A stretch of DNA of 64,000 nucleotides, taken from IMG/VR virus record IMGVR_UViG_3300033143_006101, positions 62,001-126,000 of that record; one strand, given 5' to 3'. The translations under genes were made by a program, and so were the position numbers. Of this stretch, positions 34,426 to 64,000 are shown piece after piece; position 1 is the first letter of the stretch, and each line of letters opens with the position of its first letter. The notes under the pieces are model-generated. The model did not search any database. It worked only from the letters and a program-made list of their open reading frames with translations, and was not told the DNA's origin.

Positions 34426-34978
34426 TTTAAGTGCATGGTGACCAAGTGAACTTGGTCACTGGCGTACCTAAATTTATGGAGGTTTAACATGAGAAACACA
34501 TTAGTTATAGGACACGATGAGAAGCATCATAAGGCTAACAAGTTTGGTCGTTGTAAGTCTAAGTGTATACCTAGTACATGCTTAGAATATAACAAGTGCC
34601 AGACAGAATTAAACAAGCCTATGGTTCGCAAGATACTTGGACTTGCGTAGTTACAGGATAGACTAAGTTAACTTGGTCTATCCCGTAATTAAATTAACTA
34701 TGGATCCATAGTTAAACTTATGGGTTCTGGAGGAAAGTATGAAGCTAACATAGATAAACTCTTGGCGATCATTACATGAGATAATGTATCATGGTGCAAG
34801 TCGTCAAGAGCTTATACATTATGTCAGGAGGTATTATGAACGGTAGGATTAGTGATGAAAGACTCCATGCTTATGTTCTTAAAGCATGGAGTAAGATGAA
34901 GAGAGGTTATAAGAAGTCCCGTTAATGGGATTTCTTATGAGCTTTTAGCTCATAATCTAATTTAGGAGGTGTTAACAC

Positions 34979-35146
34979 ATGTTAACATTAGAGATATTGC
35001 AAAAGAATCTTTTCTCAAAGGCAAAGACATTTAAGACTGGTTCAAAGGGTCACTATGTACACGGCAAGGTCGTGGACAAAGACGGCACTGTGTTTCAGAT
35101 GAATGCCAATGTCGTACAGATTGGTTCTAAACCGCAACCTAAATAA
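34979..35146 (+). CDS. Small phage protein (55 aa, not in the ORF track)
   Basis: MLTLE...AKTFKTGSKGHYVHGKV...FQMNANVVQIGSKP; SD aggagg. Confidence 0.6.
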   Translation: MLTLEILQKNLFSKAKTFKTGSKGHYVHGKVVDKDGTVFQMNANVVQIGSKPQPK

Positions 35147-36146
35147 TTAACTGCTGTTGCTTAGGCAGCTTGACTTGTCCTAAGCAACCAGGAGTTAACT
35201 AACTCAGGAGGTTAGAGATGAAAGACCAGATACTAAATGAAGTAGCATATGGTGTCGCTAAGTATGTTAAAGACAGACGAGCAGCAAGAGATCATCGTCA
35301 TCCTCTTGCCGGTTCTATTGTAGAACCTAGCCTCATTCCTCGTCGTACATATGCTCCACTCAATTCCATTGGCAACATCATCAAAGCCAAAGGACAGACC
35401 ATTGGAGTAAAGGTAGACACAGAGTAATTCCTTTAGCTTAGCTATGGGTTTAACTATGGATCCATAGCTAAGTCTAAGCACTTATTTAATAGGAGGTAAC
35501 ATGAAAACAAGAGTGTATTGTCACAAAACTCATGGATGGAAATCTGTTGACCAACTTGGGAATATCACTGATGCTCTCAATAAAAACAGGATGACTATCT
35601 CATGTAAACGGACAACTCATGTTAAGTAAAGAAGAACGTAAGAGACTACAGAATGCCATGAGGTATATCGACATGGCCAACGAGATAACAGATAATCTCG
35701 TGAAATCTGCAAGTAAAACCTACAAAGATTATGTCACCCGCAAGTAATTTAACTATGGATCCATAGATAACTATGGATCCATAGTAAAAATTAAAGGAGG
35801 TTATATGGACGGTAATTATGTCAGCATCAATCGTAGTGTAGTAACATGTAAGAAGCAGAAAGGTGAGAGAACAGCTATAGTACACAGGGGAGCATGTAAA
35901 CAGTGTCCCTTTCATCAAGACATAAGATGTCCAAACTAAATGTTATTCGATAGGATTATGACAGAACAAAACAAAAACCACAAAACAGATTATGATAGGT
36001 TAGTACGACTGTTAGAATCTATGGGAATGAGTACAGAACAAGCAAAACTCACCTCAAAAGACAGACTCAAACAATAAGGCATTATGTTATAGTTAACTGA
36101 TATCCTATAGTCAGGATATCAGCTTACTTTAAACCAGGAGGTACTT

Positions 36147-36659
36147 ATGAGTAATGCAACAGTAGTAAACGATTCAGTTAAGGAAGCTATGGGCAAGCTC
36201 CTCAAAGAGTTAGCATCAGTTGAGGAGAAACTTATAGGTAAAACCAGTAAGTATGATGCAAAGATCAATGTTCTGAAGGCTAAGAAGGTGAAGGAAACTA
36301 AGTCTCTGGTTGAAGAACTTGTTGGTATGCAGAAACATTTACTGGAACTTGCTGAATCATATGAGTTCGATGGTGATACTAAGACAGTAAGGTATGAGAT
36401 TGGTGATGTGTTTGCCAAGAAACTACCTGATACCTTGTTGATTCCTGATGTGGATGATACTATTGAGAAACTGGAAGAGCATGACTTCGATGATTGTATT
36501 AAGAAGGTTAAGACAATCGTTCGTAAGGCAGTAGAGAATCTGTCTGATGAAGATCAAGAAGAGTGTGGTATCTCAATTAACCCAGGTAAAGACAGGTATT
36601 ATTACAAAATCAACAGACTCAAAACCTCAACTGGACTCGTATTCCCTAAATCTGAGTAA
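36147..36659 (+). CDS. gam: Mu Gam-like host-nuclease inhibitor (DNA end-binding)
   Basis: N-terminal coiled coil, then KTVRY..G.V..KK.P..L.I.DVD..IE.L......I..K.I.RK.......GI.I..G.D.YY. Confidence 0.7.
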   Translation: MSNATVVNDSVKEAMGKLLKELASVEEKLIGKTSKYDAKINVLKAKKVKETKSLVEELVGMQKHLLELAESYEFDGDTKTVRYEIGDVFAKKLPDTLLIPDVDDTIEKLEEHDFDDCIKKVKTIVRKAVENLSDEDQEECGISINPGKDRYYYKINRLKTSTGLVFPKSE

Positions 36660-37207
36660 CACTGGAAGACTCCTTAGCAATAAGCCTAGGGAGTCTGTCA
36701 GTACTACGCAGATAGCTAGTACTACTATAAACCTCCCGCTGCCATCCCACATGTCCTAAATGAGAATTAACTATGGATCCATACTTGGACCACAGGAATA
36801 GTTAATCATGTGGGATGCGGGTGAGATGTTTCTAGTTATACGCATAGATATTAGTAATTTCACACATCATTACCCAAGTGTCTACCCAGCGATAGCCAAC
36901 ACCTTGTCCTACGTCCCATTGACTATATATGGCAAGTTGGGGCGTGGCTTGGGTGTGATTGGTGAGGTTATTGTCTGCCTCAAATTCTATACAGGAGGTA
37001 TTGCATGTCAGTTATAACAATTAAGTTTGAGGATCTCACTGAGAAGAAACAACAGGAGATACTAGAGGCTTATGAAATCGTGGATTACAAAGAAGTATTC
37101 CCATACGTACTGACTGAAATCTATGTCGAAGAGAATATAGACCTTATTACATCCTGTGAGGTTAAGCTACCGCCTTGTACACTATGTTCCTGTACAAAAT
37201 AATTATG

Positions 37208-37785: not shown

Positions 37786-39357
37786 ATGAGTTTAAGTATT
37801 CTCGGGTAAGTTCCTTGTGGAACTTATCGGAGAGTAATTAAGGAGTCGCATGAAGTATAGAGTATATTTATCGGAGACTACACATCAAAGTGTTATCGTT
37901 GAGGCAGACAGTGGTAAGGAAGCTGAGACTAAGGCACATGAGTGTATGTTTGAAGATGGTTTTAATTGGGATGGTAGAATGGAAACCAAGATACATGGTA
38001 ATGATGTTGTAGGTGAGCATGAGAATCTTGAACACTGTTTTGATTATATTAGTGAAGAGTTATGTGATGGCTGAGATACTTATATTTGTGCTTGTTGTGA
38101 TAGCAATAGCCTGGACTATATTTGAGGTAAGGATAGAGCGTCATTGTACTGGGTGTATTCATTATTATAAATGGAGTAACCCTTGTATTACGTGCAGGCA
38201 TCATTATAATCCTAAGGATAGGTCTTAGGGCTTATCCTTAGATTTATAAGGAGGTAAGTATGACAAAAGCAGTAGCTGAAACATTTACAACTAAAGACCT
38301 AACAAAAGCAGTTAAGGCAGCTCTTGTTGAGTGCAAAAATCCTTATGCCCAGACATATCTCAGGGCTATTCCATTATCAGCATTGGAGTATGGGAAGGAA
38401 GGAATACAAGTACAACTTTTGTATTGCCTTTCCAACATGCAGACATGGAGAGGAGAAACTGCAAGACAGTGTAAGAAAGTAATGAAATACTTTAGTAAGT
38501 AATAATGTTATACCTTGTCTTATGTAGAGACAGGGTATAAATTATTAAAATTGGAGGTAAGTATGAGAGTAATTAAGTTTCATCCTGGTGCTAACAAGAA
38601 GTATCAAGAAGCAAAGGAGAAGATAGCTGAGGTGGAGAAAGAACATCCTGAAATAGCTGAGAAGATGCTACTATCTTTTTATCAGATATGGGACAGGATG
38701 CTTACCATGCTTTTTAACGGTAATATTCCAAAGGATAAGTATGGTGAAGAGGAGAAGGATTACGAGTTACATATTGCAAGTGATTTTGTAGTTGGATCCT
38801 TTTCATTTGTTTATATGTATGATGAGAAGAGGGATTTCAATGGAGGAATAATACTTCATGGATTTGGTGAGACCTTTTCTGTTGAGTTGACTGCTCCTAG
38901 TCATCCACACTGGAGTATTCATACGTAGGATTATTAGCTCCCTGATAAGGGAGCTAGTAACTTTATGTTAGGAGGTTTAGATGGCTAAGAAAACAAGCAG
39001 GCGTAAGACTAGAGTAACACATAAGCATATTGGTATGTGTCCTAGATGTAAGAAGACTAAGGAGTTACATACTTTACGTGCGATGAAGGTCACTGGTTGT
39101 GCTGAATGTCTTTCTATATTTTTAGATGTGCTTGAGGAGGATCCATTACGATGAAGAAATTGATTAAGAGTAAGAAGGATATAGATCGGTACATTCAATC
39201 TGAATACGTTGATGATCTAGAATGGTCTACAATGGGGATACTTTATGTGAGACTGAACCAACAGAGTATCCTTGTGTGCTGGTTGATGAGACGCAAGTAG
39301 ATTATGAAAATTATGAATTGAATGTTAAGTTTAATTTTGTATATCCATCAGATTTTG

Positions 39358-39445: not shown

Positions 39446-41625
39446 CAGAGGTAATGGAGAAGATTGACTTCCCTTCTAACTTTAATGCAAATAACTATAA
39501 GCTTATTGCTACTGTGAAAACAGAGAAGGATGGCGGATATAGTAATGGGCAATTAAGATACAGTAAGGACAGGAATAAGTATGATGTAAAAGATGTTCCT
39601 TTATCTAGTGGACTTTATACTAATGGGTCATACTTATACAGAGTGATTGGTGAGTATAGTGAATTTTCCATTTATGTTTTTGAAAAGCAAGTATAATATA
39701 TCACCAGTAAGTTATATGTTTTCTGACATACTGGTGATATTATTAAGGAGGTACTATGAAGATTGCGAGTATAATAAATAGTGTAAGTCAAGTAACATCT
39801 GATGCTGTTGATGTGTTATCACATCCAGCCAAGTGTGTAAAACATGAGGTTAAAAAGGCGTATGCTTTTTATAAGATAATAAGTTCATAGTATTACACCT
39901 GAGGTGACTCACCTCAGGTGTAATATTATTTAACTGGAGGTAACAATGAGTACACAAATCAATGTTATAGTATTTGATAGAGATCAAGATACTATTATCG
40001 AAAACATTCTTGTGTTAGCACAAGGGGCTGATGACGCTGAACAAATCTTTTTAGATAAGTGTAGTGTTTACTTTACTAATTGGGATGAGTACACCGATGC
40101 AGACAAGGAGGCTATTTTAGATAATGGGTTTGAACAAAATTCCCACAAAATAGTATTCATTGGTTGGCCTGATGTTATAGACAAACGTAACTAAAATTTA
40201 GTTACTTGGAGGTAACAATGAGTGACTTTTTAACCTTTAGATCAAGAGCATTACAAGCACTTACTTTACTCAATTCAAAAGATCGTCCACGCTTTTCAAG
40301 CATGGAGGATAAAGAGAACTGGGTAAAAAAAGAATACACAAGACATTTCAAAAATGGAGTGTACAATTGCAAATAGGAACATTACAGAGAGATGGAACAG
40401 TAACTAACACAAGGATTATAAACCAGAACAATTTGACAGCAGAGTGCTGGTCTATACAGTTTCACGGTATAGAATACTGTGACACTTGTGAGTTCAAAGA
40501 CACCAGCAATTGTGGTGGAAAGAATATCCGCAAGACCCTGGCAAATGAGAAGGGTAACAAGATACCTTTATAGAAGGAGGTAGTATGAAAGCTAAGAGTA
40601 AAGCTAAGAAACAGAGAAAGAAACTCAAGGTGCTTCGATACTTTGAGGATACTTTGTATTAGATTGATGTCTGCCTTCGGGCAGTCATGAATTTATTCCA
40701 GGAGGTAATATGAATTGTTTACATTGTGCATCATCCAATGTTACTGAAGTATGTAAGGAGACTCTTTTAGTTTATCGAGATCCTGATACTGATGAGGATC
40801 TTGGTGGCAGTGAACTTCTTGAGAAAGAAACTTTACATTACTATTGTTATGATTGTGAAAAGAAATTTGATCCGGAAGATTAATATTCAGGAGGTTGTAT
40901 GAGTAATATGGATCCTAGCTTTTATGAGTTTGAGTATGATAGAAAAGTAACTGTGTATCTAGTTAGAGGTACTCGCATTATACAAACTAGAGTACACGAG
41001 AGACAAGCTATATTTGATGAGGATAAAAAAGGTAACACTTCGCTAAGAAGATATTACTTTGTCAAACTTCCTCATCGTAATGGTCAACTTTCACGACAAA
41101 AGATATCTGAGGATAGATTATATCCCACAGAGAAAGACGCGAGACTAAGTACTAGCATCACAGTAGAAGTAGTAAAGTAATATCAGATGAGTCCTAAGTT
41201 AGGACTCTTCCGAGTTTATTCCAGGAGGTAGTTATGTATATATATAAACAGAGTGAGCCACAATTATATACTGTAGGATTTTATTCTCCGGATGATAATA
41301 AGTGGCATCCAGAGAGTGATCATTCATCAAGTGAGGAAGCTGCAAAGCGTGTTGCTTGGTTGAATGGATCCGGTAAGGCGTGATAAGTTTTCATTTGCAG
41401 TTGGCTACGATAATTGTAGTCAATCGCAAAGTAAACCTAAGGAGGTTAAGTATGCCAAACAGATATCACATAGGTAAAGGTGGAGTTACAAAGAACCAAT
41501 ATGGGATAGAGTATGAGCATAGTCCTAAAGAAGTGAAGCGATTAAGAAAACATCGTAAGACTAAATACGATGCGAGAAAACCACAGATAGTATGTGTAGA
41601 CATTAAGAAGTAGAAGGAGGTAAGT

Positions 41626-42081
41626 GTGAGTAAGTATACACAGTTACATGACTCAATTACCAAAAATATAGAAAAGCATGGTTGGAATATCATCTTTGTT
41701 TTCTCACCTGAAGGAGAAGAAGGTATTGCCTATGCTTATACTATAGGAATGAGACAGACTTGTGATCATCCTGATTTAATATTATCTGGGTTACCATATG
41801 AAACTGCAGGAATAATCTTAAATCATATTGGTAAAGATATTAAGGAAGGTTTACAACTAACACACGGTGAAGAGCTACCTGGATATCTTGGTGACAATTA
41901 CAAGATAAAGGTGGTTAAGGTAGATGTTTTAAAATATCAACAGGTTATCCTACAATGCATGAATTACTATGAGGACAGAGACGTTGATCCTAGAGACATA
42001 GAATTCTTTCAGATAGTATGGCCTGATAAAGATGGGGAGTATGATACAACCCATCCTAAATTGCAAGATTTATTTATGTAA
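41626..42081 (+). CDS. DUF4262-like protein
   Basis: IEKHGWNIIFV...YAYTIGM...HPDLI.SGL...QIVWPDKDG.Y. Confidence 0.8.
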   Translation: MSKYTQLHDSITKNIEKHGWNIIFVFSPEGEEGIAYAYTIGMRQTCDHPDLILSGLPYETAGIILNHIGKDIKEGLQLTHGEELPGYLGDNYKIKVVKVDVLKYQQVILQCMNYYEDRDVDPRDIEFFQIVWPDKDGEYDTTHPKLQDLFM

Positions 42082-43409
42082 TAAATTAAGCTTGTTCTCT
42101 GAAGAACAGGCTCAATTTATTATAGGAGGTAGTGGATGTTATTAATAGTAATCTTTATCAGTTTAATTATAATAGGCATAGTTCTTCGTGTGAATAATAA
42201 ACAGCTTGAACCTTTACACACATTAGGAGAGGTTATTTGGATGTTGTTTATAATATTGTTAGCAATCTTGTTGATTGCACTACCATTTATACGGTATGGT
42301 TTTAAGACAGATGTGATAGCACATCAGGAGATGTTGAATACTGTTGACGACTATCGTAAGAGTGGAGATAATATTGAAAGAGTTGCGGTTGCTACAACTA
42401 TTATAGAACAGAATAGTAAGATAGCATGGATACAATTCTTAGAAAAGGATTGGCCTTTCCTTTTTGATATATTTATACCTGATGAGTACATGGTAATAAC
42501 ACCTATACGTATAAACGAGTAAACTGATGCTTGCCTTCGGGTAAGCATGAATTTATTCAGGAGGTATCATGGGAGATAAAAGTACGACGACTAGAAAATT
42601 TACAGGCAAAGTCAGAGAGACTAAAGATTCTTATGTAGTAGAAGAAAAGACTGGTCCGAACTCTATACATATGCATGAACCAGGATATTCAATAGATGAA
42701 GAATTATCACACTTTGATGGTAAGAATATAAAGGTAAAACTTATCATAGAAATAGAAGAGATTGAATAAGGTTTAAGCTTGGGCTAACCCAAGCTTAAGT
42801 TTTATAGGAGGTAGTTATGTCTAACTATAACAAGTATTACAAAGAGATTAGTGAATGGAATTGGGACGATATTGTACATTCTGCAAGAGCTAATCCTCAT
42901 GAAGATGATGATGATAACATCAAAGGGTATGAGCTTCTAGGTACTGTTATGTGCCTAGCACCGAGTAGAAAATATTATACTCCTATTGCTTGTTCCAATG
43001 TAACAGAGGAAGAAGCCAACGAAGACGCGGAGTATATGAAAGCTCTTGAGAAAATTGCTGAAGAATATGGTGGCTGGATTGAAGAAGGCCAGGGAGATCC
43101 ATGTAATGTATTATTTGTCTTAATGATTGTAGATAGTAGCTGGAAGGATTTGGTATATGAACCAGATACTTTTACTGAGAGCTACAAAGTATGGTATAAA
43201 GATAGTGAATATTCTGTACTTATTACTAATGATCCTGAGAATAAACCAGAAACAATAACTGTTTTTAAAGACGGGAAACAGTTAGAGTGGCATGATCCTG
43301 AAGGGGATGAAGTCTACACAGCATTTATTAAGAACAGATATAACAAGGTGACAATATAACTTGATGCTTGTCCCGTTGGACAGGCATGAATTTATTTAAG
43401 GAGGCAACA

Positions 43410-53473: not shown

Positions 53474-53671
53474 ATGGCTAAAACAAAAAATAAAAGACCT
53501 AAGGCAGTAGAAGACGAGCATCTTAAATTTCTGAATGACCTTAGAGAATCCAATACAACCAACATGATGGCTGGACCGCAGTATTTACAAAGTGCGTTCG
53601 GCCTGAATAGGGCTGAAGCTAAGGAAGTATTCTTCTACTGGACAAGAACTTTTGGACAGAAAGACAGATAG
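53474..53671 (+). CDS. Small conserved phage protein
   Basis: FLNDLRES..TNMM...YLQ..FGL...EA..V..YW; SD aggagg before ATG 53474. Confidence 0.6.
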   Translation: MAKTKNKRPKAVEDEHLKFLNDLRESNTTNMMAGPQYLQSAFGLNRAEAKEVFFYWTRTFGQKDR

Positions 53672-55319: not shown

Positions 55320-56330
55320 ATTGAAGCTTGCCTCACGGCAGGCTTGAGTTTATTAAAGAGGAAATTATGCTTAAAGTATTAAGCTTACAAATAGTATGTA
55401 CTGAAGACGAGATAGATCATATCATAAAGAAGTTCTACAATACTGATCTCGCTCAAGAAGGTGTGTACTGTTTTGGTGGAGAGCAAAGAGACATCACCAA
55501 CAATGAGTTTGCAGAGATCGAGGGTGAAGTTGACACCGAGATGTTTAGACTGTATGTAAATGCGGAAGACTTTTATCAGTGCGGTAGCTATGAGTCTGTG
55601 TACACCCATCCAGACAACAACGGAGACTGCCTTTACTGTCACAGTGGTAATTGGGTTAAAGGATACATAGATGATCCAGAACCTGAATAATTGATTTACC
55701 CAGCCTTAGGGCTGTGGCAAATTTATTATAGGAGGTAACAATGCATAATTTACATTTAGCAGTAATTATTGCAACAACACCAGAAGATGCTTGTAATCTT
55801 GTAGAAGATGACATTGAAGATTGGGGTAATGAAAACAACTGGAGAACTATCTGCGGTTGTGTATCAGAAGATAATAAAGTATACATTCATGATGATGGTG
55901 GACGATTTCCACCAAAAGAAAATGCAACTATAGAAACAATTAACAAAATGACTAGAGCATGGATGGGAGTTGAACAGCCAGGTATATTTAATACAGAGGG
56001 CAGAACCGAAGCGGAAAAGCATATGCAACGCCATCTTAATGGTGAACAGTTAAAACATATAGAATGGTATGCAATTGAAAGGTATGCTGAACACATGGGT
56101 GCTGTAGTTACAACCAAATCCTTTTCTATGGAAAAAAATAAAGAGTTTAGCGTATTAAAACATACTTTTAAAGAGTGGAACTTGGATGAATGTAGTGTAA
56201 CTTCTTGCATTAGTACTGCAGAAGAAATAACTGAAGGTGAAAAACGATATGTAGTTTTTATCGATATGCATAGTTAAGATTTATGCCTGGACTAATCTAG
56301 GCACAAGTTTTAAACTAAGGAGGTAATACT

Positions 56331-57338
56331 ATGGGCCGTGCACTTCATTTTAGTGTAAAACCAGACAAACCGTTTACTGACACTCAGATAGATAAAATGT
56401 ATGAAATATCTATGAAATTTAATAGTGGAAAATTCAAGGATGTTTGGACTTGCGAGAACTTCTGGTGTGATCCTTGCAACTATTATCCTAATTGGGATGA
56501 CCCGAAAGGGATATACAAAGAAGTAAAGGACGGAGAGCATTGGGAGATAATCGACAAGAGGTACTCAGAATTATTCAATGTAAATCGTAGCCGTGCCAAA
56601 ACCAGCAGACAGTTGGAGAAGGAAGGTTACATACAATTTTATAATAGTAACCCAAGAAAAGAATCACATGGTTTCTGCAAAGTACAGGGTAATGAATACA
56701 ATAGTTTACTCGTACTTCTTGCACTTGTTGAAATATCTGAAGCGATACCTAAAGCTGACATCAGAGTTAATGATGAAGGTGAGTTTCTTCTTTGTGAAAT
56801 CAAACTAAGAAACGGTAAAGCTTGCCCAGACTTGAGAGAAATGAAGAGTGATGTACTTCGCTATGCTGGGTACACACTTCTCAGTAAGCCACACTTTCTA
56901 AAGAAATTGAAGGAAGTAAAAGGTCTGGACAAAACCATAGCAACTGATCTTGGCATTGGAAATAGTTATGGTGAAATGCAATTGGAATATATTGATGAGA
57001 CATTACGCAATCTTAAGCTAGTACTCTCAAGAATTGTTCCTGTATACGAAAAGAGAAAAGAAAACCAAGGTGGCCGATTCGGTTCTTCTCCTGCATGTAT
57101 TCATAACTTAATGAATCCACCAGGATATGATCCTTTCCTATTGACCCGAGCAGATCAACTTGACATTCAGAAGTTTGCTAATTACAAGATGACACCTGAT
57201 ACCATGATGGATGGTTTTCGTGGTGAAGGTTTTGGATTAGCTGACCCAGAGAATGCTGTTAAACTGGCTCAGAATATGACTGCTATGATTAAAAAAGCTG
57301 TAGGAGATGAAGGTAAACTTCAGGTCCTCGGTGAGTAA
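56331..57338 (+). CDS. Hypothetical protein
   Basis: 335-aa ORF with SD aaggagg. Confidence 0.65.
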   Translation: MGRALHFSVKPDKPFTDTQIDKMYEISMKFNSGKFKDVWTCENFWCDPCNYYPNWDDPKGIYKEVKDGEHWEIIDKRYSELFNVNRSRAKTSRQLEKEGYIQFYNSNPRKESHGFCKVQGNEYNSLLVLLALVEISEAIPKADIRVNDEGEFLLCEIKLRNGKACPDLREMKSDVLRYAGYTLLSKPHFLKKLKEVKGLDKTIATDLGIGNSYGEMQLEYIDETLRNLKLVLSRIVPVYEKRKENQGGRFGSSPACIHNLMNPPGYDPFLLTRADQLDIQKFANYKMTPDTMMDGFRGEGFGLADPENAVKLAQNMTAMIKKAVGDEGKLQVLGE

Positions 57339-57383
57339 AATTTCTGCCTGCCCTTCGGGGCAAGCACAAGTTTTAATAGGAGG
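57333..57383 (+). repeat. 51-bp element identical to 57937-57987; the two copies flank a single gene
   Basis: gagtaaaatttctgcctgcccttcggggcaagcacaagttttaataggagg occurs twice; related copies at ~58298 and ~58677. Confidence 0.92.
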
Positions 57384-57390
57384 AAAATTT

Positions 57391-57942
57391 ATGGGATATT
57401 ATACTTATTACAAAATAGATTATCAATTGGATAAGAGCACAAACAGTAATGAAATAGACAGAGTCATCGGAGAAGATGACAATCTGGAATACGCATTTAA
57501 CGGTGATGAAAGTATTAAATGGTATGATCATGTTGATGATATGAGAATACTCTCTCTCCGATTTCCTAAAGTACTCTTCACCTTACAAGGAGAAGGGGAA
57601 GAATATGGAGATGTCTGGAAAAAATATTTCTTAAATGGTCAAACGCAAGAAGCTCAAGGCGTAATAACCTATCCGGTTTTTGATAAATCTAAACTAGACG
57701 ATTGCCCAAAGGCAATTCATGATAAATTTAAATCCATGCGAGAAGTAGAAAGACAGGCACCCACTGTACTAAGTAAAGACGTAGGAGACATTATTTATAA
57801 AGTACAAGTGAGGGGTAAAGAATACACAGTAAAAGTAAACGATTCTGAAACAACAATATTCGCAACCTCGGGAGAAAAAATAACAAATGAAGATCTAAAA
57901 ACAGAACTACTAGACATCATTAAAAATAACCCCGACGAGTAA
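57391..57942 (+). CDS. Conserved phage hypothetical protein
   Basis: MGYYTYY...KWYDH..DM..LS.RFP.VLF.L.GEGEE.GD.WKKYF.NG. Confidence 0.65.
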   Translation: MGYYTYYKIDYQLDKSTNSNEIDRVIGEDDNLEYAFNGDESIKWYDHVDDMRILSLRFPKVLFTLQGEGEEYGDVWKKYFLNGQTQEAQGVITYPVFDKSKLDDCPKAIHDKFKSMREVERQAPTVLSKDVGDIIYKVQVRGKEYTVKVNDSETTIFATSGEKITNEDLKTELLDIIKNNPDE

Positions 57943-59452
57943 AATTTCTGCCTGCCCTTCGGGGCAAGCACAAGTTTTAATAGGAGGTAACAATATGAAA
58001 ACAGCAATATTTGATAATGGAGACGTGTCTTTTGATCGCTATACTTTTATAAATGAAGATGGTGATATCTTTGGAAGCTCTGAAGATCCCCATCAGCCAC
58101 AAGGCTTCGGTCAATTTTGTGGTAACATTAAAGACCCCAGCTATGGTAAATGGAAAACTGTTGGGGAATTTATAAAAGAAGCAATTGAAGACAAGCGTCT
58201 TGGAGAGCTTATTGACTTCAAAGACATACCTGAAAGAGTACAACAATTTATTGAAGAAAGGAGATAAGCTTCACGTCTTAGGAAAGTAAGATTTTTACCT
58301 GCCCTTCGGGGCAAGCACAAATTTTAAACAGGAGGTATATGACGAATAAATTAAAAGGAAAGCATGTGACAATCATGGGACGTAGATGGTTTGATACAGC
58401 CAATGGTAACACGTATCATGTAGTCAGAGTATTTATTAATCAAGACCTACTTGTTACAAGTGACTTCACATATGGTTATGAAAACCACTACAAACAAACA
58501 GCTTTCGAATTATTACAACAACATGGATTTGTCAAAAAGACTGGGGAAAGATCTAATGGTATGGATGCTGACTACCTTAGGTATACTCAGTATATTCGTG
58601 ACAACCGAAAGAACTTTCTATTCACAGTAACTGATCATGATAGAAAGAAAGACTTACTAGATTGGTAGTAAGATTTATGCATGTCCTTCGGGACAAGCAC
58701 AAGTTTTATTAAGGAGATAACAATATGAAAAGATATGAATTTTCAATTACGCTTGGTGGATATGGTGACAATGCTGATGAAGCGTGGGTTGATGCTGTAG
58801 AAGGTTTCCAACAGGACCTGGGAGCTACACCAGATGAAGATGATTATACTGTAGAAGAAGAGGAGAAAGACTAATGGGATACAAAAAAATGACACTTGAA
58901 CAGTCAGATGATGATAATGTTCAAGATGATAATGAGTATGTCCCGACACGAAGCGAGTCCTTTCTATTTGGATTACAAGATGGTTGGGGCACAGTACCTA
59001 AAACAATAATACAATTATTTTTAGGGATTATTATAACGATATTAGTTCTTGGTCTAGTATGCTGAGAGGGTATCGAACCTTTAAGGAGGAACATTATGAG
59101 TTTCTTAGAAGATTATGATAGGAATTGGAATAATCTTAAAGAGCAAGACAAACAAGCTAAAGAAAGTGGAGTGATAGTAGGTCGTTATATACAACACCAA
59201 TATGCAGATGGGCATGCTATCTATACCATCGTTAAAGAGAACAAGAATTCTGTACGAATAGAACATTGTGCTCTTGGTGGTGATGATTGGGTCCTGCCTG
59301 CATGGGGATATAAAGCTACTATTGATAAAAATTTAGCTCTAACCAACCTCAATCAAAGAGATAGGTTGGCCGAAATATTTAGCCGTAAGAGAGCATAAGA
59401 ATTATGTTTGGGCTATTGCCCAGACACAAATCTTATTAGGAGGTAATGATTA

Positions 59453-60082: not shown

Positions 60083-60149
60083 TTGGTTTACCCCACATTG
60101 CTATGGATCCATAGTAGTGTGGTGCAAATTTTTTATAAGGAGGTATCAT

Positions 60150-60884
60150 ATGCCAAATCATGTACTTAACATAATGATTCTTAGTGGAGAAGAAAAAGAC
60201 ATTGCTAAACTGAGGGAGAGTATTAAAGGAGTTGATGATGACGGTGAAGAAATGCCCATCGACTTTGACAAAATAATGCCTATGCCCAAAGATTTACGTA
60301 TTGACAGTGTTCATAGTGGTATCATTTCAGCAGCTAAATGGGCTCTAAAAGAAATCAATTTGGAACCTAGATATCCTGGAGATATGAATGACATGTCTAC
60401 GGTTATTAACGCTATGGAAACACAAAATGCTTTTAAAGAAAAATCACCATTGGAATTTAGTGATGAAGATTGGGATGTGTTTATCCAAGTATTACAAAAC
60501 TACAAGAAGCATGGAGTAGGATATTGGTATGATTGGACTAGAGCTAACTGGGATACTAAATGGAATGCATATAGCCAGCGGGAAGAAGATGGAACAATAC
60601 GTTTTGACACTGCCTGGAGCACTCCATGTAAAGTTATTCAAAAGTTGAGCAAACAACATCCTGAAGTTAAGATAGAAATACATTATGCTGATGAAGACAC
60701 AGGATGTAATTGTGGAATGTATGTCTTTAAGAATGGTAAACAAACAATGCATTACGAACCAGATTATGATGATCGTAAAGCGTCTGTCAAGTACGCTCTT
60801 AGTGTACGTGGCATTACGGACCCTGATATAATCAGGGAACATGGATATGATCCAAAAACATTTGAATACATAGAAGAAGAATAA
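60150..60884 (+). CDS. YubB/DUF1281-like ferredoxin-fold protein
   Basis: MPNH..N, DFDKI.PMP, WYDW.R.NW.TKWNA, F.TAWS.P, ..YADED.G.NCG. Confidence 0.75.
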   Translation: MPNHVLNIMILSGEEKDIAKLRESIKGVDDDGEEMPIDFDKIMPMPKDLRIDSVHSGIISAAKWALKEINLEPRYPGDMNDMSTVINAMETQNAFKEKSPLEFSDEDWDVFIQVLQNYKKHGVGYWYDWTRANWDTKWNAYSQREEDGTIRFDTAWSTPCKVIQKLSKQHPEVKIEIHYADEDTGCNCGMYVFKNGKQTMHYEPDYDDRKASVKYALSVRGITDPDIIREHGYDPKTFEYIEEE

Positions 60885-61429
60885 TTAAAGCTGTTCCCTT
60901 CGGGGAACAACTGTAATTCTTTTAAGGAGGAACAAATGGGATATACAACAGAATTCCAAGGTGAATTCAAAATTGATAAACCAGTTGATGAGGATACGTA
61001 CAAACTTCTTGTAGGACTTAACACAACGAGAAGAATGAAGCGTGACCCTAAGAAGCTGGCTAAGAGACTTGGTAAAACTACTGAAGAAGTTATTGAACTT
61101 TACGGTAAAGAGTGTGACTTGTGGGTTGGTGATACAGACGACTTTGGCCAAGAGAAACCACAGGAAGATAATCCTTTCGGTGAAGAATCCAACGGAAAAT
61201 ATTATCCTGTAAAAGTTTTACAAAAGGTTCCGCTAAAAGAGGTAACCGATACCCAAATGCAGATAATATACTTGGAAGATCAAATCGAACAGTGCAAGAA
61301 AGATTGCCCTGACGATGTACCAGAGCTTGAAGAATCACTAAAAGAACTTAAAGCGAAAGAATAAAACCTTAACCCACACTTGATGAATTTAATACAAGTG
61401 TAGGTTAAATTTTTATAAGGAGGAACTTT

Positions 61430-61963
61430 ATGAAAATAGATACAGTGAATAAATTTCTTATGATTTTATTACTTATTGCAATAGGATCATTCTTCTTTTG
61501 TGAGAAGGGTGGTTCCAACGAATCCAGTACAGCACAAGCAGAAACCTGCCCCACATGTGACGTGTGTGAAGTATGCGAAGTGTGTGAGGTATGTGAAGTG
61601 TGTGAGGTATGTCCGGAAACGGATCCGCCAGGTATTATTGGATGGAAGTTCTGGAGTAATAACTTTCCTATTACTAGTGGAGACACAATTGATAGTAATA
61701 GAATATTCTACCTTGAAATAGATGAAAGTTTGGATTCTGTTAATTCCACTATTACAATATTTAAACTCGGGGTTAATAGTTATACAGAAGTTACCCCACC
61801 TGCTGGATATGGTTGGCAATCTGGTAATACAGTATTGCAGATCTTAGTATCCGGTGGTAATTGGTGGCCTGTAGGATCATATGTTATCGTAGGCACTCTA
61901 ATTGATAGTGCAGGTAATGCTTTTACTCTGCCACCTTTCTTATTTACTACAGTTGATCCGTAA
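61430..61963 (+). CDS. Membrane/lipoprotein-like protein with a (CxV)n Cys repeat
   Basis: Hydrophobic signal ending FFFC, polar linker, CPTCDV(CEV)5CP, then a beta-sandwich-like domain. Confidence 0.65.
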   Translation: MKIDTVNKFLMILLLIAIGSFFFCEKGGSNESSTAQAETCPTCDVCEVCEVCEVCEVCEVCPETDPPGIIGWKFWSNNFPITSGDTIDSNRIFYLEIDESLDSVNSTITIFKLGVNSYTEVTPPAGYGWQSGNTVLQILVSGGNWWPVGSYVIVGTLIDSAGNAFTLPPFLFTTVDP

Positions 61964-62023
61964 GAATTATAGGACTTCAAGTGTATCTTGGAGTCTTATA
62001 TTTTTTATTAAGGAGGAAGTATT

Positions 62024-62365
62024 ATGACAGAGATATTAGACAATGGTCTTGAGATAGAAAAGACTTTAGTTGTTAGTACAATTCATATAATGGAAGCTGA
62101 CGATGCTTTTTTTACTCAACTTCAAATTGAGCCTTTTAAATTAACACCCCCACTCATTATAGATGATTTAACATATGGTTGGTATATTTATATACCTTCT
62201 GATGAGAATGATTTTAATGAGACTTGTAAATCTATTCAAGAAGATACTAGCTTGAGTGATATCTTTTTGGACTTGTTTAAATTAACACGAGAACTTGACT
62301 GTCGCTATCTCAAACTAGATAGGGATGGGCCTATCGCACCTGATCTTCCCCAGGGTGATTGGTAA
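62024..62365 (+). CDS. DUF5983-like protein
   Basis: LVVST.HI...D; YGW.I; C.YL.LD.DGP....LP..DW. Confidence 0.55.
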   Translation: MTEILDNGLEIEKTLVVSTIHIMEADDAFFTQLQIEPFKLTPPLIIDDLTYGWYIYIPSDENDFNETCKSIQEDTSLSDIFLDLFKLTRELDCRYLKLDRDGPIAPDLPQGDW

Positions 62366-64000
62366 ACAACATGAAAACTTAACCTACAACTGTGGATCCA
62401 TAGCAGATGTAGGGTAATTTTTTATGAGGAGGTATTATATATTGACAGATGAGCAACAGAAAAAGTATCTAGAACAGGGTGGTATTCGTTGTCCTTATTG
62501 TAATAGTGTAGACATTACAACCACACAACCTGTACAAACTGATATAGGTATTGCTTGGCAGAATATTTGTTGTAACGATTGTACAGAAGAATGGACAGAT
62601 GAAAATACTCTTACTAATGTAAAACCAAGTTAGATTGATGCTTGCCCTGAGGCAAGCATGAGTTTAATATAGGAGGTAATATGAATCCATACGAAAAAGA
62701 AGGGTATCTTAAACCGGTAATTCCGTATGTTCAAAGAAGTCCCGAAACAGAAAAACTGCATAAAGCAGAAGAGAATATGATAGAAGCTATATTTAAAACA
62801 ACACAGGCATTTAGATCAATTTTTAAAACAAAAGGACTCTATCAACATATCTGGAAAGAAGCTTTACCAGAAGTATTAGTACAGGCTCTTGAAGGTTTTG
62901 ATAGACCAGCAGCAGAACTTGCAGCTATAGCTTTTCTGGAAAAACAGGGTTATACTATTACAAAATAGGAGGTGCTATGAAAGTACCCAATAAGAAAAAG
63001 TTAAAGAAGTTAGATGTTTTCAGAGCAACAGATCAACCAGAGGAGTGTAGTCAATGTAGTAGCCGTACTGACTTTGAGAATATAAATGAAATCCAAGAGT
63101 ACCACGAGTGTCTTAATTGCGGTTTTGAATTTATACTTGATCATACAGAGGACTACTATCATGAGTTCTCCGTCACCTTTGACATAGAAAGTACAATGGA
63201 TCCTGACGACATTCCTTATGCAGAATTGATAAGGCTCTGCGGGGATTGGCAGACTACCTGGAGAAAAATCCAGATAGAAATGCTTTCAAATATGAAGATG
63301 GAGACCCTGACAAATAGTATATTCAATATGCGGTAATTCTATTAATACTTGAATTACTGCACATTTATTATATTAAGGAGGTAACATGAAATATACAGTA
63401 AAAGCAGTAAAATTTTCACCTGGACATGATAGTTGCTGTATGAATTGTAACCTATATCACGGCAAGAAAAAAATTGCAAGTGTATGGGATGATTCTTATG
63501 GTGGTGGCTATCAGTATACATGGGTATCTGACGAAGAAGAAAAAGAATTTTTAAATCATGTAAAAAGCCAGCCTCAATGGGAATCAGAATTTACTAAAGG
63601 TAAAAAGTTTAATATGACTAATGATATCTATATTCATAGATTAATTAAGCAAGTTGAAAAAGAAAAAGAGGAAAAGAAAAGAATTAAACTGTATGAAAAA
63701 GCAATAGTTGTAATGACTAAAGATGACGACAGCGATTATTCTTATTTTCGCATGCCGAAAGGTAAGACAGTTGCCATGATACCCAAAGAAGTATTACGTA
63801 ATTGGGTATCCGATATTGAGAGAGATTTAAAACCCGATGAATATATTGCTAACACAAACATTTAACTAACACACCCAAGCTACATGCTTGGGTGTGTTAG
63901 TTAACAGGAGGTACTATGGTAAAAGGAACTAAAACACTTCTCGCCAGAAGAGAAGGTAAAGATTATTTCTTTACATATCTTGTAGAAGATCAAGATGAAA

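What the first reader, a model, noticed from the sequence alone, without database searches (positions are those of the whole stretch)
34430..63910. Cassette-like early region: nearly every gene has its own stop-hairpin-AT tract-AGGAGG module
Seen: about 50 stem-loops of 8-19 bp, starting at or just after a stop codon and ending about 5-15 nt before a strong SD. They lack the long U-runs of intrinsic terminators and fall into sequence subfamilies (TTGATGCYTGCC..GGCARGCATGAR; TGCCTGCCC-TTCG-GGGCAAGCACAA; TGTCTGC..GCAGRCACAA). Known analogues: RNase III sites between T7 and SPO1/SP82 early genes, and PeSL elements that shuffle modules in T4-type phages. Inference: processing into stabilised monocistronic mRNAs and/or recombination joints for a variable accessory-gene array.
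Basis: partly seen in the sequence, partly recalled or inferred. Interest (0 to 1): 0.7.

Follow-up and report, generated by a model that had tools for sequence, protein, structure and literature searches.

The report
Hairpin linkers between phage early genes
In an uncultured 253-kb jumbo phage, about 50 small genes in a row are each followed by a stable RNA hairpin that runs from the stop codon to just before the next gene's ribosome-binding site. This is a denser, promoter-less variant of the intercistronic hairpins known from SPO1/SP82, T7 and T4-type phages, and it most likely shapes mRNA processing or stability and serves as reusable linkers when genes are shuffled.

Summary
Of 57 same-strand gene junctions of 30-160 nt in 34430-63910, 49 carry a hairpin of dG <= -8. 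The median helix is 17 bp with a 4-nt loop. It starts 2 nt inside the stop codon and ends 4 nt before an AGGAGG-type Shine-Dalgarno. Stable local folds are 4-14 times commoner than in shuffles. About 12 more modules lie beyond the window end.

The hairpins act in the sense RNA:
- more G.U pairs on the + strand (91 against 21);
- C(UUCG)G tetraloops;
- compensatory changes within two paralogous families.

They are not canonical terminators: T-runs are <=3 in 33 of 49. There is no room for promoters, and only one sigma70-like promoter lies in 30 kb.

Linkers of 43-89 nt recur at 81-98% identity, bounded by stop and start codons, between unrelated genes. A distant relative keeps the control region and two anchor genes but no other gene.

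Best reading: intercistronic processing, stabilising or insulating hairpins in long early transcripts, which also provide homology for cassette exchange. RNase III cleavage and recombination at the hairpins remain untested: no RNA data and no close relative were available. Hairpin density equals that of SPO1's host-takeover module. I rate it a new variant of a known kind.

The parts
34430..63910 (+). Array of about 71 small + strand genes (about 2.4 per kb) with AGGAGG-type SDs and hairpin linkers. It continues past the window end to about genome position 134.4 kb.
34436..34461 (+). linker hairpin, 11 bp, loop 4, dG -15.2
34936..34954 (+). linker hairpin, 8 bp, loop 3, dG -8.1
35147..35198 (+). 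linker hairpin, 21 bp, loop 6, dG -24.2
35436..35473 (+). linker hairpin, 17 bp, dG -22.1; built on the GGATCC-centred palindrome
35752..35785 (+). linker hairpin, 15 bp, dG -22.9; two tandem copies of the GGATCC palindrome
36097..36122 (+). linker hairpin, 10 bp, loop 6, dG -12.8
37797..37836 (+). linker hairpin, 17 bp, dG -23.6
38500..38547 (+). linker hairpin, 21 bp, dG -20.9; includes the stop codon
38923..38968 (+). linker hairpin, 20 bp, dG -25.1; includes the stop codon
39352..39445 (+). Family A linker (hairpin 39352-39399, 20 bp) plus a small TCRAACC hairpin. It is an 89-nt module 96.6% identical to 53669-53757.
39698..39740 (+). linker hairpin, 16 bp, loop 9, dG -17.9
39887..39929 (+). 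linker hairpin, 20 bp, loop 3, dG -29.2
40660..40695 (+). family A linker hairpin, 14 bp, C(UUCG)G loop
41183..41213 (+). linker hairpin, 12 bp, dG -12.9
41394..41430 (+). linker hairpin, 16 bp, dG -16.4
42078..42123 (+). linker hairpin, 20 bp, dG -19.9; runs from the stop codon to the SD
42517..42558 (+). family A linker hairpin, 17 bp, UUCG loop; abuts the SD
42766..42805 (+). linker hairpin, 18 bp, dG -19.0; z -3.9
43356..43395 (+). family A linker hairpin, 16 bp
43768..43791 (+). linker hairpin, 9 bp, dG -11.8
44020..44052 (+). linker hairpin, 14 bp, dG -13.8
44417..44463 (+). linker hairpin, 21 bp, dG -22.8
45595..45616 (+). linker hairpin, 9 bp, dG -13.9
46353..46392 (+). linker hairpin, 18 bp, dG -17.8; z -5.5
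46851..46875 (+). linker hairpin, 11 bp, dG -11.7
47531..47570 (+). 18-bp hairpin that starts right after the stop codon and ends at the next (TTG) start; that gene has only a weak SD
48393..48434 (+). family B-like linker hairpin, 16 bp; loop contains UUCG
48874..48905 (+). Family A linker hairpin, 13 bp (17 with the lower stem), z -5.2. The repeat includes the last three codons of the upstream gene.
49141..49180 (+). linker hairpin, 16 bp, dG -11.2
49546..49570 (+). family A hairpin followed by T5; the only one followed by a promoter
49580..49608 (+). The only near-consensus sigma70-type promoter in the array (TTGACA-17-TATGAT). It lies upstream of an HNH endonuclease gene (49636-50097).
50517..50541 (+). 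linker hairpin, 10 bp, dG -12.7
50833..50878 (+). linker hairpin, 18 bp, dG -23.5; terminator-like tail UUUAUUUU
51291..51316 (+). family C hairpin (partner of 51953-51994)
51679..51727 (+). linker hairpin, 22 bp, dG -26.1
51953..51994 (+). family C linker hairpin, 19 bp, z -6.7
52938..52954 (+). linker hairpin, 7 bp, dG -10.5
53667..53757 (+). family A linker (hairpin 53667-53706) plus a small TCGAACC hairpin; twin of 39358-39445
54040..54086 (+). linker hairpin, 20 bp, dG -20.5
55324..55345 (+). family A hairpin with compensatory A-U/U-A swap, before gene 55363-55690
55687..55729 (+). linker hairpin, 17 bp, dG -14.1
56274..56313 (+). family B linker hairpin, 17 bp
57336..57375 (+). family B linker hairpin, 16 bp, C(UUCG)G; the 54-nt module is 98% identical to 57937-57990
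57940..57979 (+). family B linker hairpin, 16 bp, C(UUCG)G
58298..58315 (+). family B hairpin core, C(UUCG)G
58667..58710 (+). family B linker hairpin, 18 bp, C(UUCG)G
59395..59436 (+). family B linker hairpin, 17 bp, with compensatory changes
60085..60130 (+). linker hairpin, 19 bp, built on the GGATCC palindrome; T6 tail
60883..60918 (+). linker hairpin, 14 bp, C(UUCG)G
61369..61408 (+). linker hairpin, 15 bp, T5 tail
61960..62008 (+). linker hairpin, 21 bp, T6 tail; the most terminator-like
62370..62426 (+). linker hairpin, 21 bp, loop 9
62629..62668 (+). family A linker hairpin, 17 bp
63862..63904 (+). linker hairpin, perfect 19 bp, dG -31.5, z -8.0
33304..33416 (+). Non-coding control region upstream of the array. 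It is 72% identical to the corresponding region of the distant relative L013.

Best explanation
WHAT IT IS. The region is the early, host-takeover-like accessory-gene array of an uncultured jumbo myovirus. That timing is inferred, not shown.

TRANSCRIPTION. The array is read as a few very long polycistronic RNAs by host RNA polymerase.

THE LINKER. Between cistrons sits a standard linker of about 55 nt, in this order:
- the stop codon;
- a stable helix of about 17 bp, with an A/U-rich lower stem that contains the stop codon, a G+C-rich upper stem and a tetraloop;
- 0-9 free A/U-rich nucleotides;
- a near-perfect Shine-Dalgarno (AGGAGGT);
- the start codon.

SHOWN. The helix forms in the sense RNA.

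INFERRED FUNCTION
(a) Each hairpin acts as a barrier to 3'-to-5' exonucleases, or as an endonuclease (RNase III-type or RNase Y/E-type) processing site. The long transcript is thereby converted into stabilised cistron-sized pieces, or decays as such pieces.
(b) The strong SD immediately 3' of the hairpin acts as a ribosome-bound 5' stabiliser and as an independent ribosome entry site.
(c) Locking the intercistronic sequence into a local helix keeps each SD accessible whatever gene lies upstream.
(d) A minority with U5-U6 tails may also terminate partially.

EVOLUTION. Because the linkers are similar to one another, they also offer short homologies by which promoter-less ORFs are inserted, lost or swapped by homologous recombination.
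For: SHOWN
- Enrichment and geometry of the hairpins.
- RNA-level, sense-strand signal:
  - + strand peaks exceed - strand peaks, 43 against 22 and 47 against 22 per 10 kb;
  - isolated G.U against A.C mismatches, 62 against 18, where composition predicts about 1.2:1;
  - + strand folds are more stable than folds of the reverse complement in 35 against 12 cases, Wilcoxon p = 4e-5, with 91 against 21 G.U pairs;
  - 10 of the genome's 17 + strand CTTCGG copies lie in this 30 kb.
- Covariation in two paralogous families: 97.8% and 94.1% of cells paired, 4 and 8 pairs changed on both sides, 0 of 500 shuffles as good. The lower stem that contains the stop codon covaries too.
- No canonical U-tract in most.
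- Sigma70-type promoters are not enriched: 68 against 82.7 and 74 against 75.9 expected. Only one good one lies in the array. With 15-25 nt from hairpin to start codon there is no room for a promoter. Downstream genes must therefore be reached by read-through of many hairpins in series.
- The SD is predicted more accessible in the native context than with the upstream sequence shuffled (0.58 against 0.46, p = 1e-4).
- Precedents:
  - SPO1's host-takeover module has the same hairpin density (20.5-23.8 against 22.4 per 10 kb) and conserved hairpins that begin at the stop codon;
  - mutating the RBS of SP82 phage mRNA shortens its half-life, and the title of Hue et al. 1995, listed in that review, names a polypurine 5' mRNA stabiliser in B. 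subtilis (PMC7509114);
  - in the Herelleviridae phage CKA15 only 13 of 66 mapped transcript 3' ends look like intrinsic terminators (PMC12282133).
- Linker reuse:
  - direct repeats of 43-89 nt at 81-98% identity are confined to the stretch from stop codon to start codon;
  - they lie between genes that are not paralogues;
  - six consecutive junctions (56.3-59.4 kb) carry family B linkers.
- Hyperplasticity: L013 shares the control region and two collinear anchor genes, but none of the 10 (against about 24) genes between them. It uses the same stop-hairpin-SD architecture with unrelated hairpin sequences.
Against: - There are no RNA data for this phage or its relatives, so no cleavage site, 3' end or half-life is known.
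- The host and its RNases are unknown.
- The phage encodes no RNase III.
- Helices have a median of 17 bp, and only 14 of 49 reach 20 bp. That is short for classical RNase III substrates.
- About 19 of 49 pass a liberal terminator rule, and non-canonical hairpins can still end transcripts.
- 'Early' timing is inferred from position and gene content only.
- Gene calls are my own SD-based heuristic.
- The comparison of + and - strand folds is partly biased, because the hairpins were chosen on the + strand.
- The family alignments are small and hand-picked.
- The only natural variant found (L012) differs by a deletion inside a gene, not at a hairpin.
Confidence: 0.5

Rival explanations
1. Leaky intrinsic terminators or attenuators. 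Each hairpin stops a fraction of polymerases, which gives a graded, position-dependent dose along the array. Alternatively it provides timing control that a phage antiterminator relieves.
For: - Terminator-like sites by a liberal rule number 28 against 8.4 and 23 against 7.7 expected. About 19 of them coincide with linker hairpins.
- The tails are T-rich (typically 4-6 T in 9 nt), and six have T5-T6.
- In phage CKA15 many mapped 3' ends lack canonical terminator features.
Against: - 33 of 49 have no T-run longer than 3, and the run usually starts 4-5 nt after the G+C core.
- Compensatory changes keep the A/U lower stem paired, which termination does not need.
- With about 50-60 hairpins in series and one recognisable internal promoter, even 10% termination at each would silence the distal genes.
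Confidence: 0.2
2. The hairpins are chiefly translational devices. The helix brings the stop codon next to the following SD. It is melted by the terminating ribosome and re-forms behind it. It thereby insulates each ribosome-binding site, or hands ribosomes on from one cistron to the next (termination-reinitiation across the helix).
For: - The helix starts inside the stop codon in 26 of 49 and ends 0-3 nt before the SD in 23 of 49.
- The lower stem that holds the stop codon covaries.
- The SD is always outside the helix and is predicted more open than in shuffled contexts.
Against: - The accessibility gain is modest (0.58 against 0.46).
- Masking the 5' arm, to mimic a terminating ribosome, changes little (0.53, not significant).
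- The tight geometry may simply reflect minimal spacers.
- Very strong SDs need no hand-over.
Confidence: 0.12
3. The hairpins are primarily DNA-level elements. They would be mobile or recombinogenic palindromes of the REP, MITE or attC kind, or protein-binding sites, whose RNA structure is incidental.
For: - Linker modules are copied between unrelated genes, with boundaries at the stop and start codons.
- The sub-family built on the perfect GGATCC-centred palindrome looks like a protein-binding site.
Against: - The sense-strand-specific G.U pairs and UUCG loops.
- No Y1/RAYT transposase, tyrosine recombinase or serine recombinase in the genome.
- 29 of 64 hairpins have no sequence relative, yet they keep the same geometry.
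Confidence: 0.08
4. The hairpins are promoters, or combined terminator-promoters, for an unrecognised phage RNA polymerase, as with the hairpin promoters of N4 virion RNA polymerase. Every gene would then be its own transcription unit.
For: - Several very large proteins (1150-1951 aa) have no family assignment.
- The hairpin-AU tract-SD arrangement would give short leaders.
Against: - No T7/N4-type polymerase domain was found (the control did not ring, so this is weak evidence).
- No DFDGD-type catalytic motif in a long ORF.
- Three sigma-like ORFs imply that the host polymerase is used.
- The hairpin sequences are highly diverse and the stems much longer than in N4 promoters (the N4 comparison is from my own knowledge).
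Confidence: 0.03
5. Chance or a compositional artefact.
For: None beyond the A+T richness of the spacers.
Against: - 66 peaks against 4.7 in dinucleotide shuffles at dG <= -15.
- A fourfold excess over the rest of the same genome and over the T4 early region.
- Fixed position relative to stop codon and SD.
Confidence: 0.005

Closest known systems
Early region ('host-takeover module') of Bacillus phages SPO1/SP82, with its intercistronic Bs-RNase III hairpins and strong-SD 5' stabiliser
   Same: - Clusters of small early genes with very strong SDs.
- The same density of stable sense-strand hairpins (20.5-23.8 against 22.4 per 10 kb at dG <= -15).
- Conserved hairpin families that begin at the stop codon and precede the next SD.
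- Phage-encoded sigma-like factors.
- A DNA polymerase distantly nearest to SPO1-like Bacillus phages (27-28% identity).
   Different: - SPO1 spacers are 100-210 nt. They carry a canonical terminator and/or a sigma-A promoter for most genes.
- Here the spacers are about 55 nt, there are no promoters, the helices are nearly perfect with tetraloops, and the array is about three times longer (about 38 kb, about 85 genes).
- The array lies inside the genome, not in a long terminal redundancy. The terminal repeat is only 72 bp.
- RNase III cleavage is documented for SP82 (my own knowledge: Panganiban and Whiteley 1983) and is untested here.
PeSL (promoter-early stem-loop) cassettes of T4-type phages (PMC2839356; PMC4122927)
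   Same: - A stem-loop, then an A/T-rich stretch, then SD and start codon.
- They recur as conserved copies in hyperplastic regions between small ORFans.
- They are proposed to mediate cassette gain, loss and exchange by recombination.
   Different: - A PeSL is defined by a sigma70-like -35/-10 promoter between stem-loop and SD. That promoter is absent here, and there is no space for it.
- Only one junction (49546-49608) has the full stem-loop-plus-promoter layout.
- The link to indel breakpoints and to mini-circles could not be tested.
RNase III processing sites between T7 early genes
   Same: Hairpins sit between cistrons of a long early transcript. After cleavage the hairpin is left at the 3' end as a stabiliser (my own knowledge).
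   Different: - T7 has about 10 sites in 40 kb, with a characteristic internal loop and about 20 bp or more of helix.
- Here there are about 17 hairpins per 10 kb, mostly 14-19 bp and nearly perfect.
Intercistronic C(UUCG)G hairpins of phage T4 (Tuerk et al. 1988, my own knowledge)
   Same: Extra-stable UUCG tetraloop hairpins sit between phage genes. Six or more linkers here have C(UUCG)G.
   Different: In the T4 early region tested here (30-77 kb) the density of stable hairpins is only 5.1 per 10 kb, against 22.4 here. Most T4 junctions there are overlaps or short gaps.
REP (repetitive extragenic palindromic) elements in enterobacterial operons
   Same: Families of imperfect palindromes sit just after stop codons inside operons and protect the upstream mRNA from 3' exonucleases (my own knowledge).
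   Different: - REPs are chromosomal and are spread by RAYT transposases.
- No Y1 transposase is present here.
- Most of the hairpins here are unique in sequence.
Integron gene cassettes (promoter-less ORF plus attC hairpin)
   Same: An array of promoter-less ORFs, each followed by an imperfect palindrome that is conserved in structure rather than in sequence.
   Different: - No tyrosine recombinase is present.
- The strand asymmetry points to RNA, not to a folded bottom DNA strand.
- No R/L core sites were seen on inspection.
Mimivirus 'hairpin rule' (PMC4402537)
   Same: Nearly every gene is followed by a hairpin-forming palindrome that defines the mRNA 3' end through cleavage.
   Different: That is a eukaryotic-type giant virus with its own hairpin-cleaving enzyme and its own polyA polymerases. 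No RNase III was detected here. It is an analogy only.

Membership tests
PeSL | Stem-loop immediately upstream of the regulatory cassette | tested here: met
   49 hairpins lie between a stop codon and the next SD.
PeSL | Sigma70-like -35/-10 early promoter between stem-loop and SD | tested here: not met
   - Hairpin to start codon is about 15-25 nt.
- Promoter-like sites are not enriched (68 against 82.7, 74 against 75.9 expected).
- Only 49580-49608 qualifies.
PeSL | Conserved copies that flank variable ORFs in hyperplastic regions | tested here: met
   Linker repeats of 43-89 nt at 81-98% identity lie between genes that are not paralogues. The array is hyperplastic compared with L013.
PeSL | Indel or replacement breakpoints between close relatives fall at the elements; mini-circles form | not testable with these tools
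   No relative closer than 56% (single protein) was found, apart from an essentially identical contig.
Intrinsic (factor-independent) terminator | G+C-rich stem-loop | tested here: met
   Each hairpin has 3-8 G-C pairs.
Intrinsic (factor-independent) terminator | U-rich tract directly 3' of the stem | tested here: not met
   The longest T-run is <= 3 in 33 of 49 and >= 5 in 6 of 49, and it usually starts 4-5 nt after the core. About 19 pass the liberal rule of >= 5 T in 8.
Intrinsic (factor-independent) terminator | Transcripts end at the site | not testable with these tools
   No sequencing run could be listed.
RNase III processing site (T7 / SP82 type) | About two turns (about 20 bp or more) of double-stranded RNA | tested here: inconclusive
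   Median 17 bp, IQR 14-19; 14 of 49 have >= 20 bp.
RNase III processing site (T7 / SP82 type) | Cleavage by RNase III in vivo or in vitro | not testable with these tools
   There are no RNA data. The host is unknown. The phage has no RNase III gene.
SPO1-type host-takeover module | Cluster of small early genes with very strong ribosome-binding sites | tested here: met
   - 71 genes in 30 kb, with 6-7-nt matches to AAGGAGGT in nearly all.
- About 22 SD-plus-start motifs per 10 kb, against 3-8 elsewhere in the genome.
- Early timing itself was not tested.
SPO1-type host-takeover module | Individual strong sigma-A promoters for most genes or operons | tested here: not met
   Only one near-consensus promoter lies in the array. 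The SPO1 spacers do show them.
SPO1-type host-takeover module | Location in a long terminal redundancy | tested here: not met
   The array lies at 96-134 kb of 253 kb, and the terminal repeat is 72 bp.
REP / RAYT system | Associated Y1 (RAYT) transposase | tested here: not met
   PF01797 is absent and the controls rang.
Integron cassette array | IntI tyrosine recombinase next to the array | tested here: not met
   PF00589 is absent from the whole genome and the controls rang in 14 of 14. The serine recombinase family is also absent.
Rfam RNA families | Match to any curated covariance model | tested here: not met
   No match at gathering score anywhere in the window.

The most novel reading that the evidence does not exclude
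The stop-helix-SD linker would be a standardised, promoter-less 'cassette junction' with two roles in a lineage of jumbo phages.

1. In RNA, the helix places the stop codon of one gene against the SD of the next. This defines processing and ribosome hand-over, so that any ORF dropped between two linkers is expressed at once.
2. In DNA, the linkers are the preferred homologous-recombination joints through which ORFs are exchanged.

This would be functionally analogous to an integron without an integrase. It would account for a 38-kb array of about 85 mostly orphan genes served by very few promoters.
Probability: 0.12. Interest if true: 0.75.

Novelty: new variant of a known kind. Interest (0 to 1): 0.5.

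Why it matters
- It shows how a large phage may express some 85 unrelated small genes from very few promoters. The means is a uniform RNA linker that makes each cistron autonomous.
- The same linkers would make the region easy to remodel. That bears on how host-takeover and anti-defence gene sets turn over.
- The strict geometry is a ready-made natural 'insulated cistron' design that can be tested in Bacillus or E. coli. The helix runs from stop codon to SD, its lower stem covaries, and it carries UUCG loops.
- It extends the SPO1/SP82 and PeSL concepts to a deep-branching uncultured jumbo-phage lineage, in which a distant relative keeps the architecture but not the sequences.

Tried and rejected
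SEARCHES FOR RELATIVES
- Near and distant DNA searches and a protein search of the phage collection with window segments found nothing.
- The putative terminase and the DNA polymerase gave only matches of about 40% identity or less, or partial ones.
- The search for related loci with the ligase alone found nothing.
- With a DUF932 alignment it returned 77 loci, all <= 40% identical and from unrelated phages.
- Exact-pattern scans for family A and family B linkers found nothing in viral contigs. The family A pattern alone was also scanned in metagenome contigs and found nothing.
- Homologue look-ups gave one essentially identical contig, L012, which carries no information on covariation.
- They also gave L013 at 56%, which shares the architecture but only 2 genes.
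- The ligase relatives L096 and L097 are not syntenic, and L096 has no hairpin architecture.
- The test of whether breakpoints fall in the hairpins could therefore not be done.

RNA EVIDENCE
- Two run searches listed none, so read laying was never used.

OTHER NEGATIVE RESULTS
- Rfam: no match.
- The phage encodes no detectable RNase III, Y1 transposase, tyrosine recombinase or serine recombinase.
- The search for a T7-like RNA polymerase was uninformative because its control did not ring.
- A DFDGD-motif scan was negative.

METHOD NOTES
- BLAST clustering of whole linkers was dominated by the shared SD and had to be replaced by hand-chosen family alignments.
- Looking at convergent gene ends for 'true' terminators of this phage was uninformative, because my gene calls are incomplete outside the array.

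IDEAS CONSIDERED AND REJECTED
- tRNA-derived origin of the hairpins: no tRNA in the window.
- Chance.

Full report
CONTEXT

The window is positions 62001-126000 of a 252,876-bp IMG/VR virus record. The record has terminal repeats and is estimated to be complete. The repeat is 72 bp.

The genome has these features:
- a tail sheath, a baseplate wedge protein and a family-A DNA polymerase;
- 25 tRNAs;
- inteins;
- three sigma70-region-2-like ORFs;
- no detectable RNase III.

Nothing in the phage collection is close at the DNA level. The polymerase is distantly nearest (27-28% identity) to SPO1-like Bacillus phages. The host is unknown. The near-perfect AGGAGGT Shine-Dalgarno sequences suggest, but do not prove, a Firmicute-like host.

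THE OBSERVATION

I called genes with an SD-anchored heuristic. On the + strand of 34.0-64.5 kb there are 71 genes, about 2.4 per kb. Nearly all have a 6-7-nt match to AAGGAGGT.

Of the 71 genes, 57 follow the previous stop codon by 30-160 nt. Of these 57 gaps, 49 contain a hairpin of dG <= -8 kcal/mol. The other 14 genes are overlapped or nearly abutted (10) or follow long non-coding gaps (4).

The geometry is uniform:
- the gap has a median of 55 nt (IQR 51-67);
- the helix has a median of 17 bp (IQR 14-19);
- the loop has a median of 4 nt;
- the helix starts at a median of 2 nt inside the stop codon, and 26 of 49 include the stop;
- the helix ends at a median of 4 nt before the SD.

Ten junctions folded with the fold tool give z-scores from -1.8 to -8.0. 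The helix takes in the UAA and leaves the SD and AUG unpaired.

The hairpins are far commoner than chance allows:
- Peaks of 44-nt windows at dG <= -12 number 131, against 35 +/- 5 in dinucleotide shuffles. At <= -15 they number 66 against 4.7.
- Along the genome the excess is confined to about 90-135 kb.
- About 12 further modules lie beyond the window end, up to about 134.4 kb.

The longest T-run near the G+C core is <= 3 in 33 of 49 and >= 5 in only 6. A liberal terminator rule is nevertheless met by about 19.

RNA OR DNA?

Four observations point to function in the sense RNA:
- Stable folds are about twice as frequent on the + strand as on the - strand within 100-120 kb.
- With a strand-neutral stem definition, isolated G.U mismatches outnumber A.C by 62 to 18, where composition predicts about 1.2:1.
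- The 49 hairpins fold 3.6 kcal/mol better on average than their reverse complements: 35 against 12, p = 4e-5, with 91 against 21 G.U pairs. The caveat is that they were selected on the + strand.
- Ten of the genome's 17 + strand CTTCGG copies lie in this 30 kb, and at least six hairpins have a C(UUCG)G tetraloop.

Two paralogous families could be aligned. On the helix I named, 97.8% and 94.1% of cells pair. Four and eight pairs show changes on both sides. None of 500 shuffles matched the observed pairing or covariation score, and sliding the partner by 1-3 columns drops pairing to 28-49%.

The A/U-rich lower stem, which contains the stop codon, also shows UA-to-AU swaps and conserved G.U pairs. 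The whole helix of about 17 bp therefore appears to be selected, not only the G+C core.

NOT PROMOTERS AND NOT EFFICIENT TERMINATORS

Sigma70-type promoter matches are not enriched: 68 against 82.7 and 74 against 75.9 expected. The 15-25 nt between hairpin and start codon cannot hold a promoter.

Only one near-consensus promoter exists inside the array (TTGACA-17-TATGAT, 49580-49608). It sits in front of an HNH endonuclease gene. Distal genes must therefore be reached by reading through many hairpins in series. That is incompatible with efficient termination at each one. This is an inference, and it assumes that the genes are expressed and that the host promoters are sigma70-like.

LINKERS AS REPEATED MODULES

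A self-comparison of the genome shows that, within the array, the only repeats are direct repeats of the linkers themselves, 43-89 nt at 81-98% identity:
- 39358-39445 matches 53669-53757 at 96.6%;
- 57333-57386 matches 57937-57990 at 98%;
- family A has about 9-10 members scattered over 39-72 kb;
- family B occupies six consecutive junctions at 56.3-59.4 kb;
- family C occupies two adjacent junctions.

Similarity begins at the stop codon, or up to three codons before it, and ends at the start codon. The flanking genes are not paralogues. The only paralogous pair in the array is the two HNH genes.

The linkers have therefore been copied or exchanged independently of the genes. Alternatively, genes have been inserted next to copies of linkers. 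No Y1 transposase, tyrosine recombinase or serine recombinase is encoded. Ordinary homologous recombination is thus the likeliest agent. Still, 29 of 64 hairpins have no relative in the genome. Structure and position are conserved, not sequence.

RELATIVES

- L012, a metagenome contig, is identical to 42670-45960 apart from a 66-bp in-frame deletion inside the DUF932-like gene and one SNP.
- L013, a Logan contig, is the best distant relative. Its non-coding control region matches 33304-33416 at 72%. A 42-aa Cys-rich protein and the DUF932-like protein (56%) follow in the same order. None of the genes in between is shared: 10 there against about 24 here.
- L013 uses the same stop-hairpin-SD layout with unrelated hairpin sequences, at 30 stable hairpins per 10 kb.
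- This supports the view of a hyperplastic accessory array whose architecture is conserved. The divergence is too great to locate breakpoints.
- Two ligase relatives are not syntenic. One of them, L096, lacks the architecture at that locus.

GENE CONTENT

Of 55 array proteins of at least 60 aa, about 10 match Pfam and about 15 match PHROGs. The matches include Mu Gam-like, SSB, ATP-dependent DNA ligase, DUF932-like, two HNH endonucleases, DUF4262 and DUF6927. The rest are orphans.

COMPARISON WITH KNOWN SYSTEMS

SPO1's host-takeover module, folded in the same way, has the same density of stable sense-strand hairpins: 20.5-23.8 against 22.4 per 10 kb. The T4 early region 30-77 kb has 5.1, and other parts of this genome have 5.3. 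SPO1 has a conserved hairpin family that begins at the stop codon and precedes a strong SD. Its spacers, however, are 100-210 nt and also carry terminators and sigma-A promoters.

A review reports that mutating the RBS of SP82 phage mRNA shortens its half-life. It also reports that a strong SD alone can stabilise mRNA for ermC and ompA. Its reference list includes Hue et al. [quoted passage not shown]

In the Herelleviridae phage CKA15 only 13 of 66 mapped 3' ends look like intrinsic terminators (PMC12282133). PeSLs are defined as a stem-loop plus a sigma70-like promoter plus an SD, and they are linked to indels and mini-circles (PMC4122927). Here the promoter is missing, so this is not a PeSL, although the proposed recombination role is analogous.

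REP elements, integron attC arrays and the Mimivirus hairpin rule (PMC4402537) are analogies only.

MECHANISM PROPOSED

The following are shown:
- stable sense-RNA helices bridge stop codon and SD at 49 of 57 junctions;
- the helices covary;
- there are no promoters;
- U-tracts are weak or absent;
- linkers are duplicated between unrelated genes.

The following are inferred:
- the array is transcribed as long polycistronic early RNAs;
- each hairpin blocks 3' exonucleases or is cleaved by a double-strand-specific or adjacent single-strand-specific endonuclease;
- the ribosome-bound strong SD protects the new 5' end and drives independent initiation;
- the local helix insulates the SD, whose predicted accessibility is 0.58 against 0.46 with shuffled upstream sequence;
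- a few U-rich examples may attenuate transcription;
- linker similarity promotes exchange of cassettes.

I put about 0.5 on this composite. The main rivals are leaky termination (0.2) and a chiefly translational role (0.12).

LIMITS

- There are no RNA data.
- The host is unknown.
- No close relative was found.
- Gene calls are heuristic.
- The covariation alignments are small and hand-picked.
- Early timing is inferred from gene content and position only.

VERDICT

The feature is real and striking. It is best filed as a promoter-less, unusually dense and regular variant of the intercistronic hairpin systems already known from phage early regions. Interest is moderate (0.5).

Noticed in passing
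33221-33246, 34694-34715, 35450-35471, 35748-35789 (two copies), 36768-36785, 60098-60117; also genome 22227, 81026, 128696, 246202: A perfect palindrome (T)TAACTATGGATCCATAGTTA(A). The 14-mer CTATGGATCCATAG occurs 10 times in the genome, and 5 of those lie in the first 2.5 kb of the array. Being a perfect palindrome with no G.U asymmetry, it looks more like a binding site for a dimeric DNA-binding protein (an operator?) than like the other linkers. The relative L013 has CATGTGGATCCACATG.
   Followed up: partly
39407-39420, 45893-45906, 53719-53732, 59067-59080; genome 127293, 134160: A small hairpin motif, GAGAGGG(U/A)(A/G)UCGAACC(C/U)U, lies just 5' of an SD: 4 matches against 0.6 expected. 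It resembles the antisense of a tRNA T-arm. L013 has GGGAAUCGACCC / GAAGUCGAACCC at a comparable place. The one SNP between the window and contig L012 falls in its loop (45901).
   Followed up: partly
37203-37546: A 343-nt non-coding gap inside the array. It holds a 16-bp hairpin (37206-37245), three tandem copies of ACACCGGACTACACTTGAGTA (37246-37305) and two copies of AGAACACAAAGGCATACAATT (about 37416-37500). It may be an internal regulatory or promoter region.
   Followed up: no
33304-33480: A control region upstream of the array that is conserved with L013 (72% over 117 nt). It contains GGGTACCCACCCGT and repeated CATCATCAAAAGTTGAC / TTGACC motifs, which look like iterons or -35 boxes.
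   Followed up: partly
44771-44836: The metagenome contig L012 (JGI 3300033153) is otherwise identical to the window but lacks these 66 bp, in frame, within the DUF932-like gene. This is natural microheterogeneity, and it is not at a hairpin.
   Followed up: yes
49636-50097 and 52978-53463: Two HNH_3 homing-endonuclease paralogues (40% identity) sit inside the array. The first is preceded by the only near-consensus sigma70 promoter (49580-49608).
   Followed up: partly
47925-48060: An open frame of about 45 codons with no start codon and no SD lies directly after gene 47571-47924. It may be a frameshifted or decayed gene end.
   Followed up: no
30545-30600: A 26-bp all-A/T palindrome lies at the edge of the divergent region between the - strand and + strand gene blocks.
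   Followed up: no
32348-32579: Degenerate direct repeats (74% over about 120 nt) rich in AGATTAGA / AGACTAGAATAG motifs, in a non-coding stretch.
   Followed up: no
whole genome (outside the window): - 25 tRNA genes in three clusters.
- Inteins with LAGLIDADG domains in a class II ribonucleotide reductase and in a 1431-aa protein.
- Three sigma70_r2-like ORFs at 141.1, 143.6 and 231.8 kb.
- Several proteins of 1150-1951 aa with no family match, including the two at window 61-4059 and 4133-7585.
   Followed up: partly
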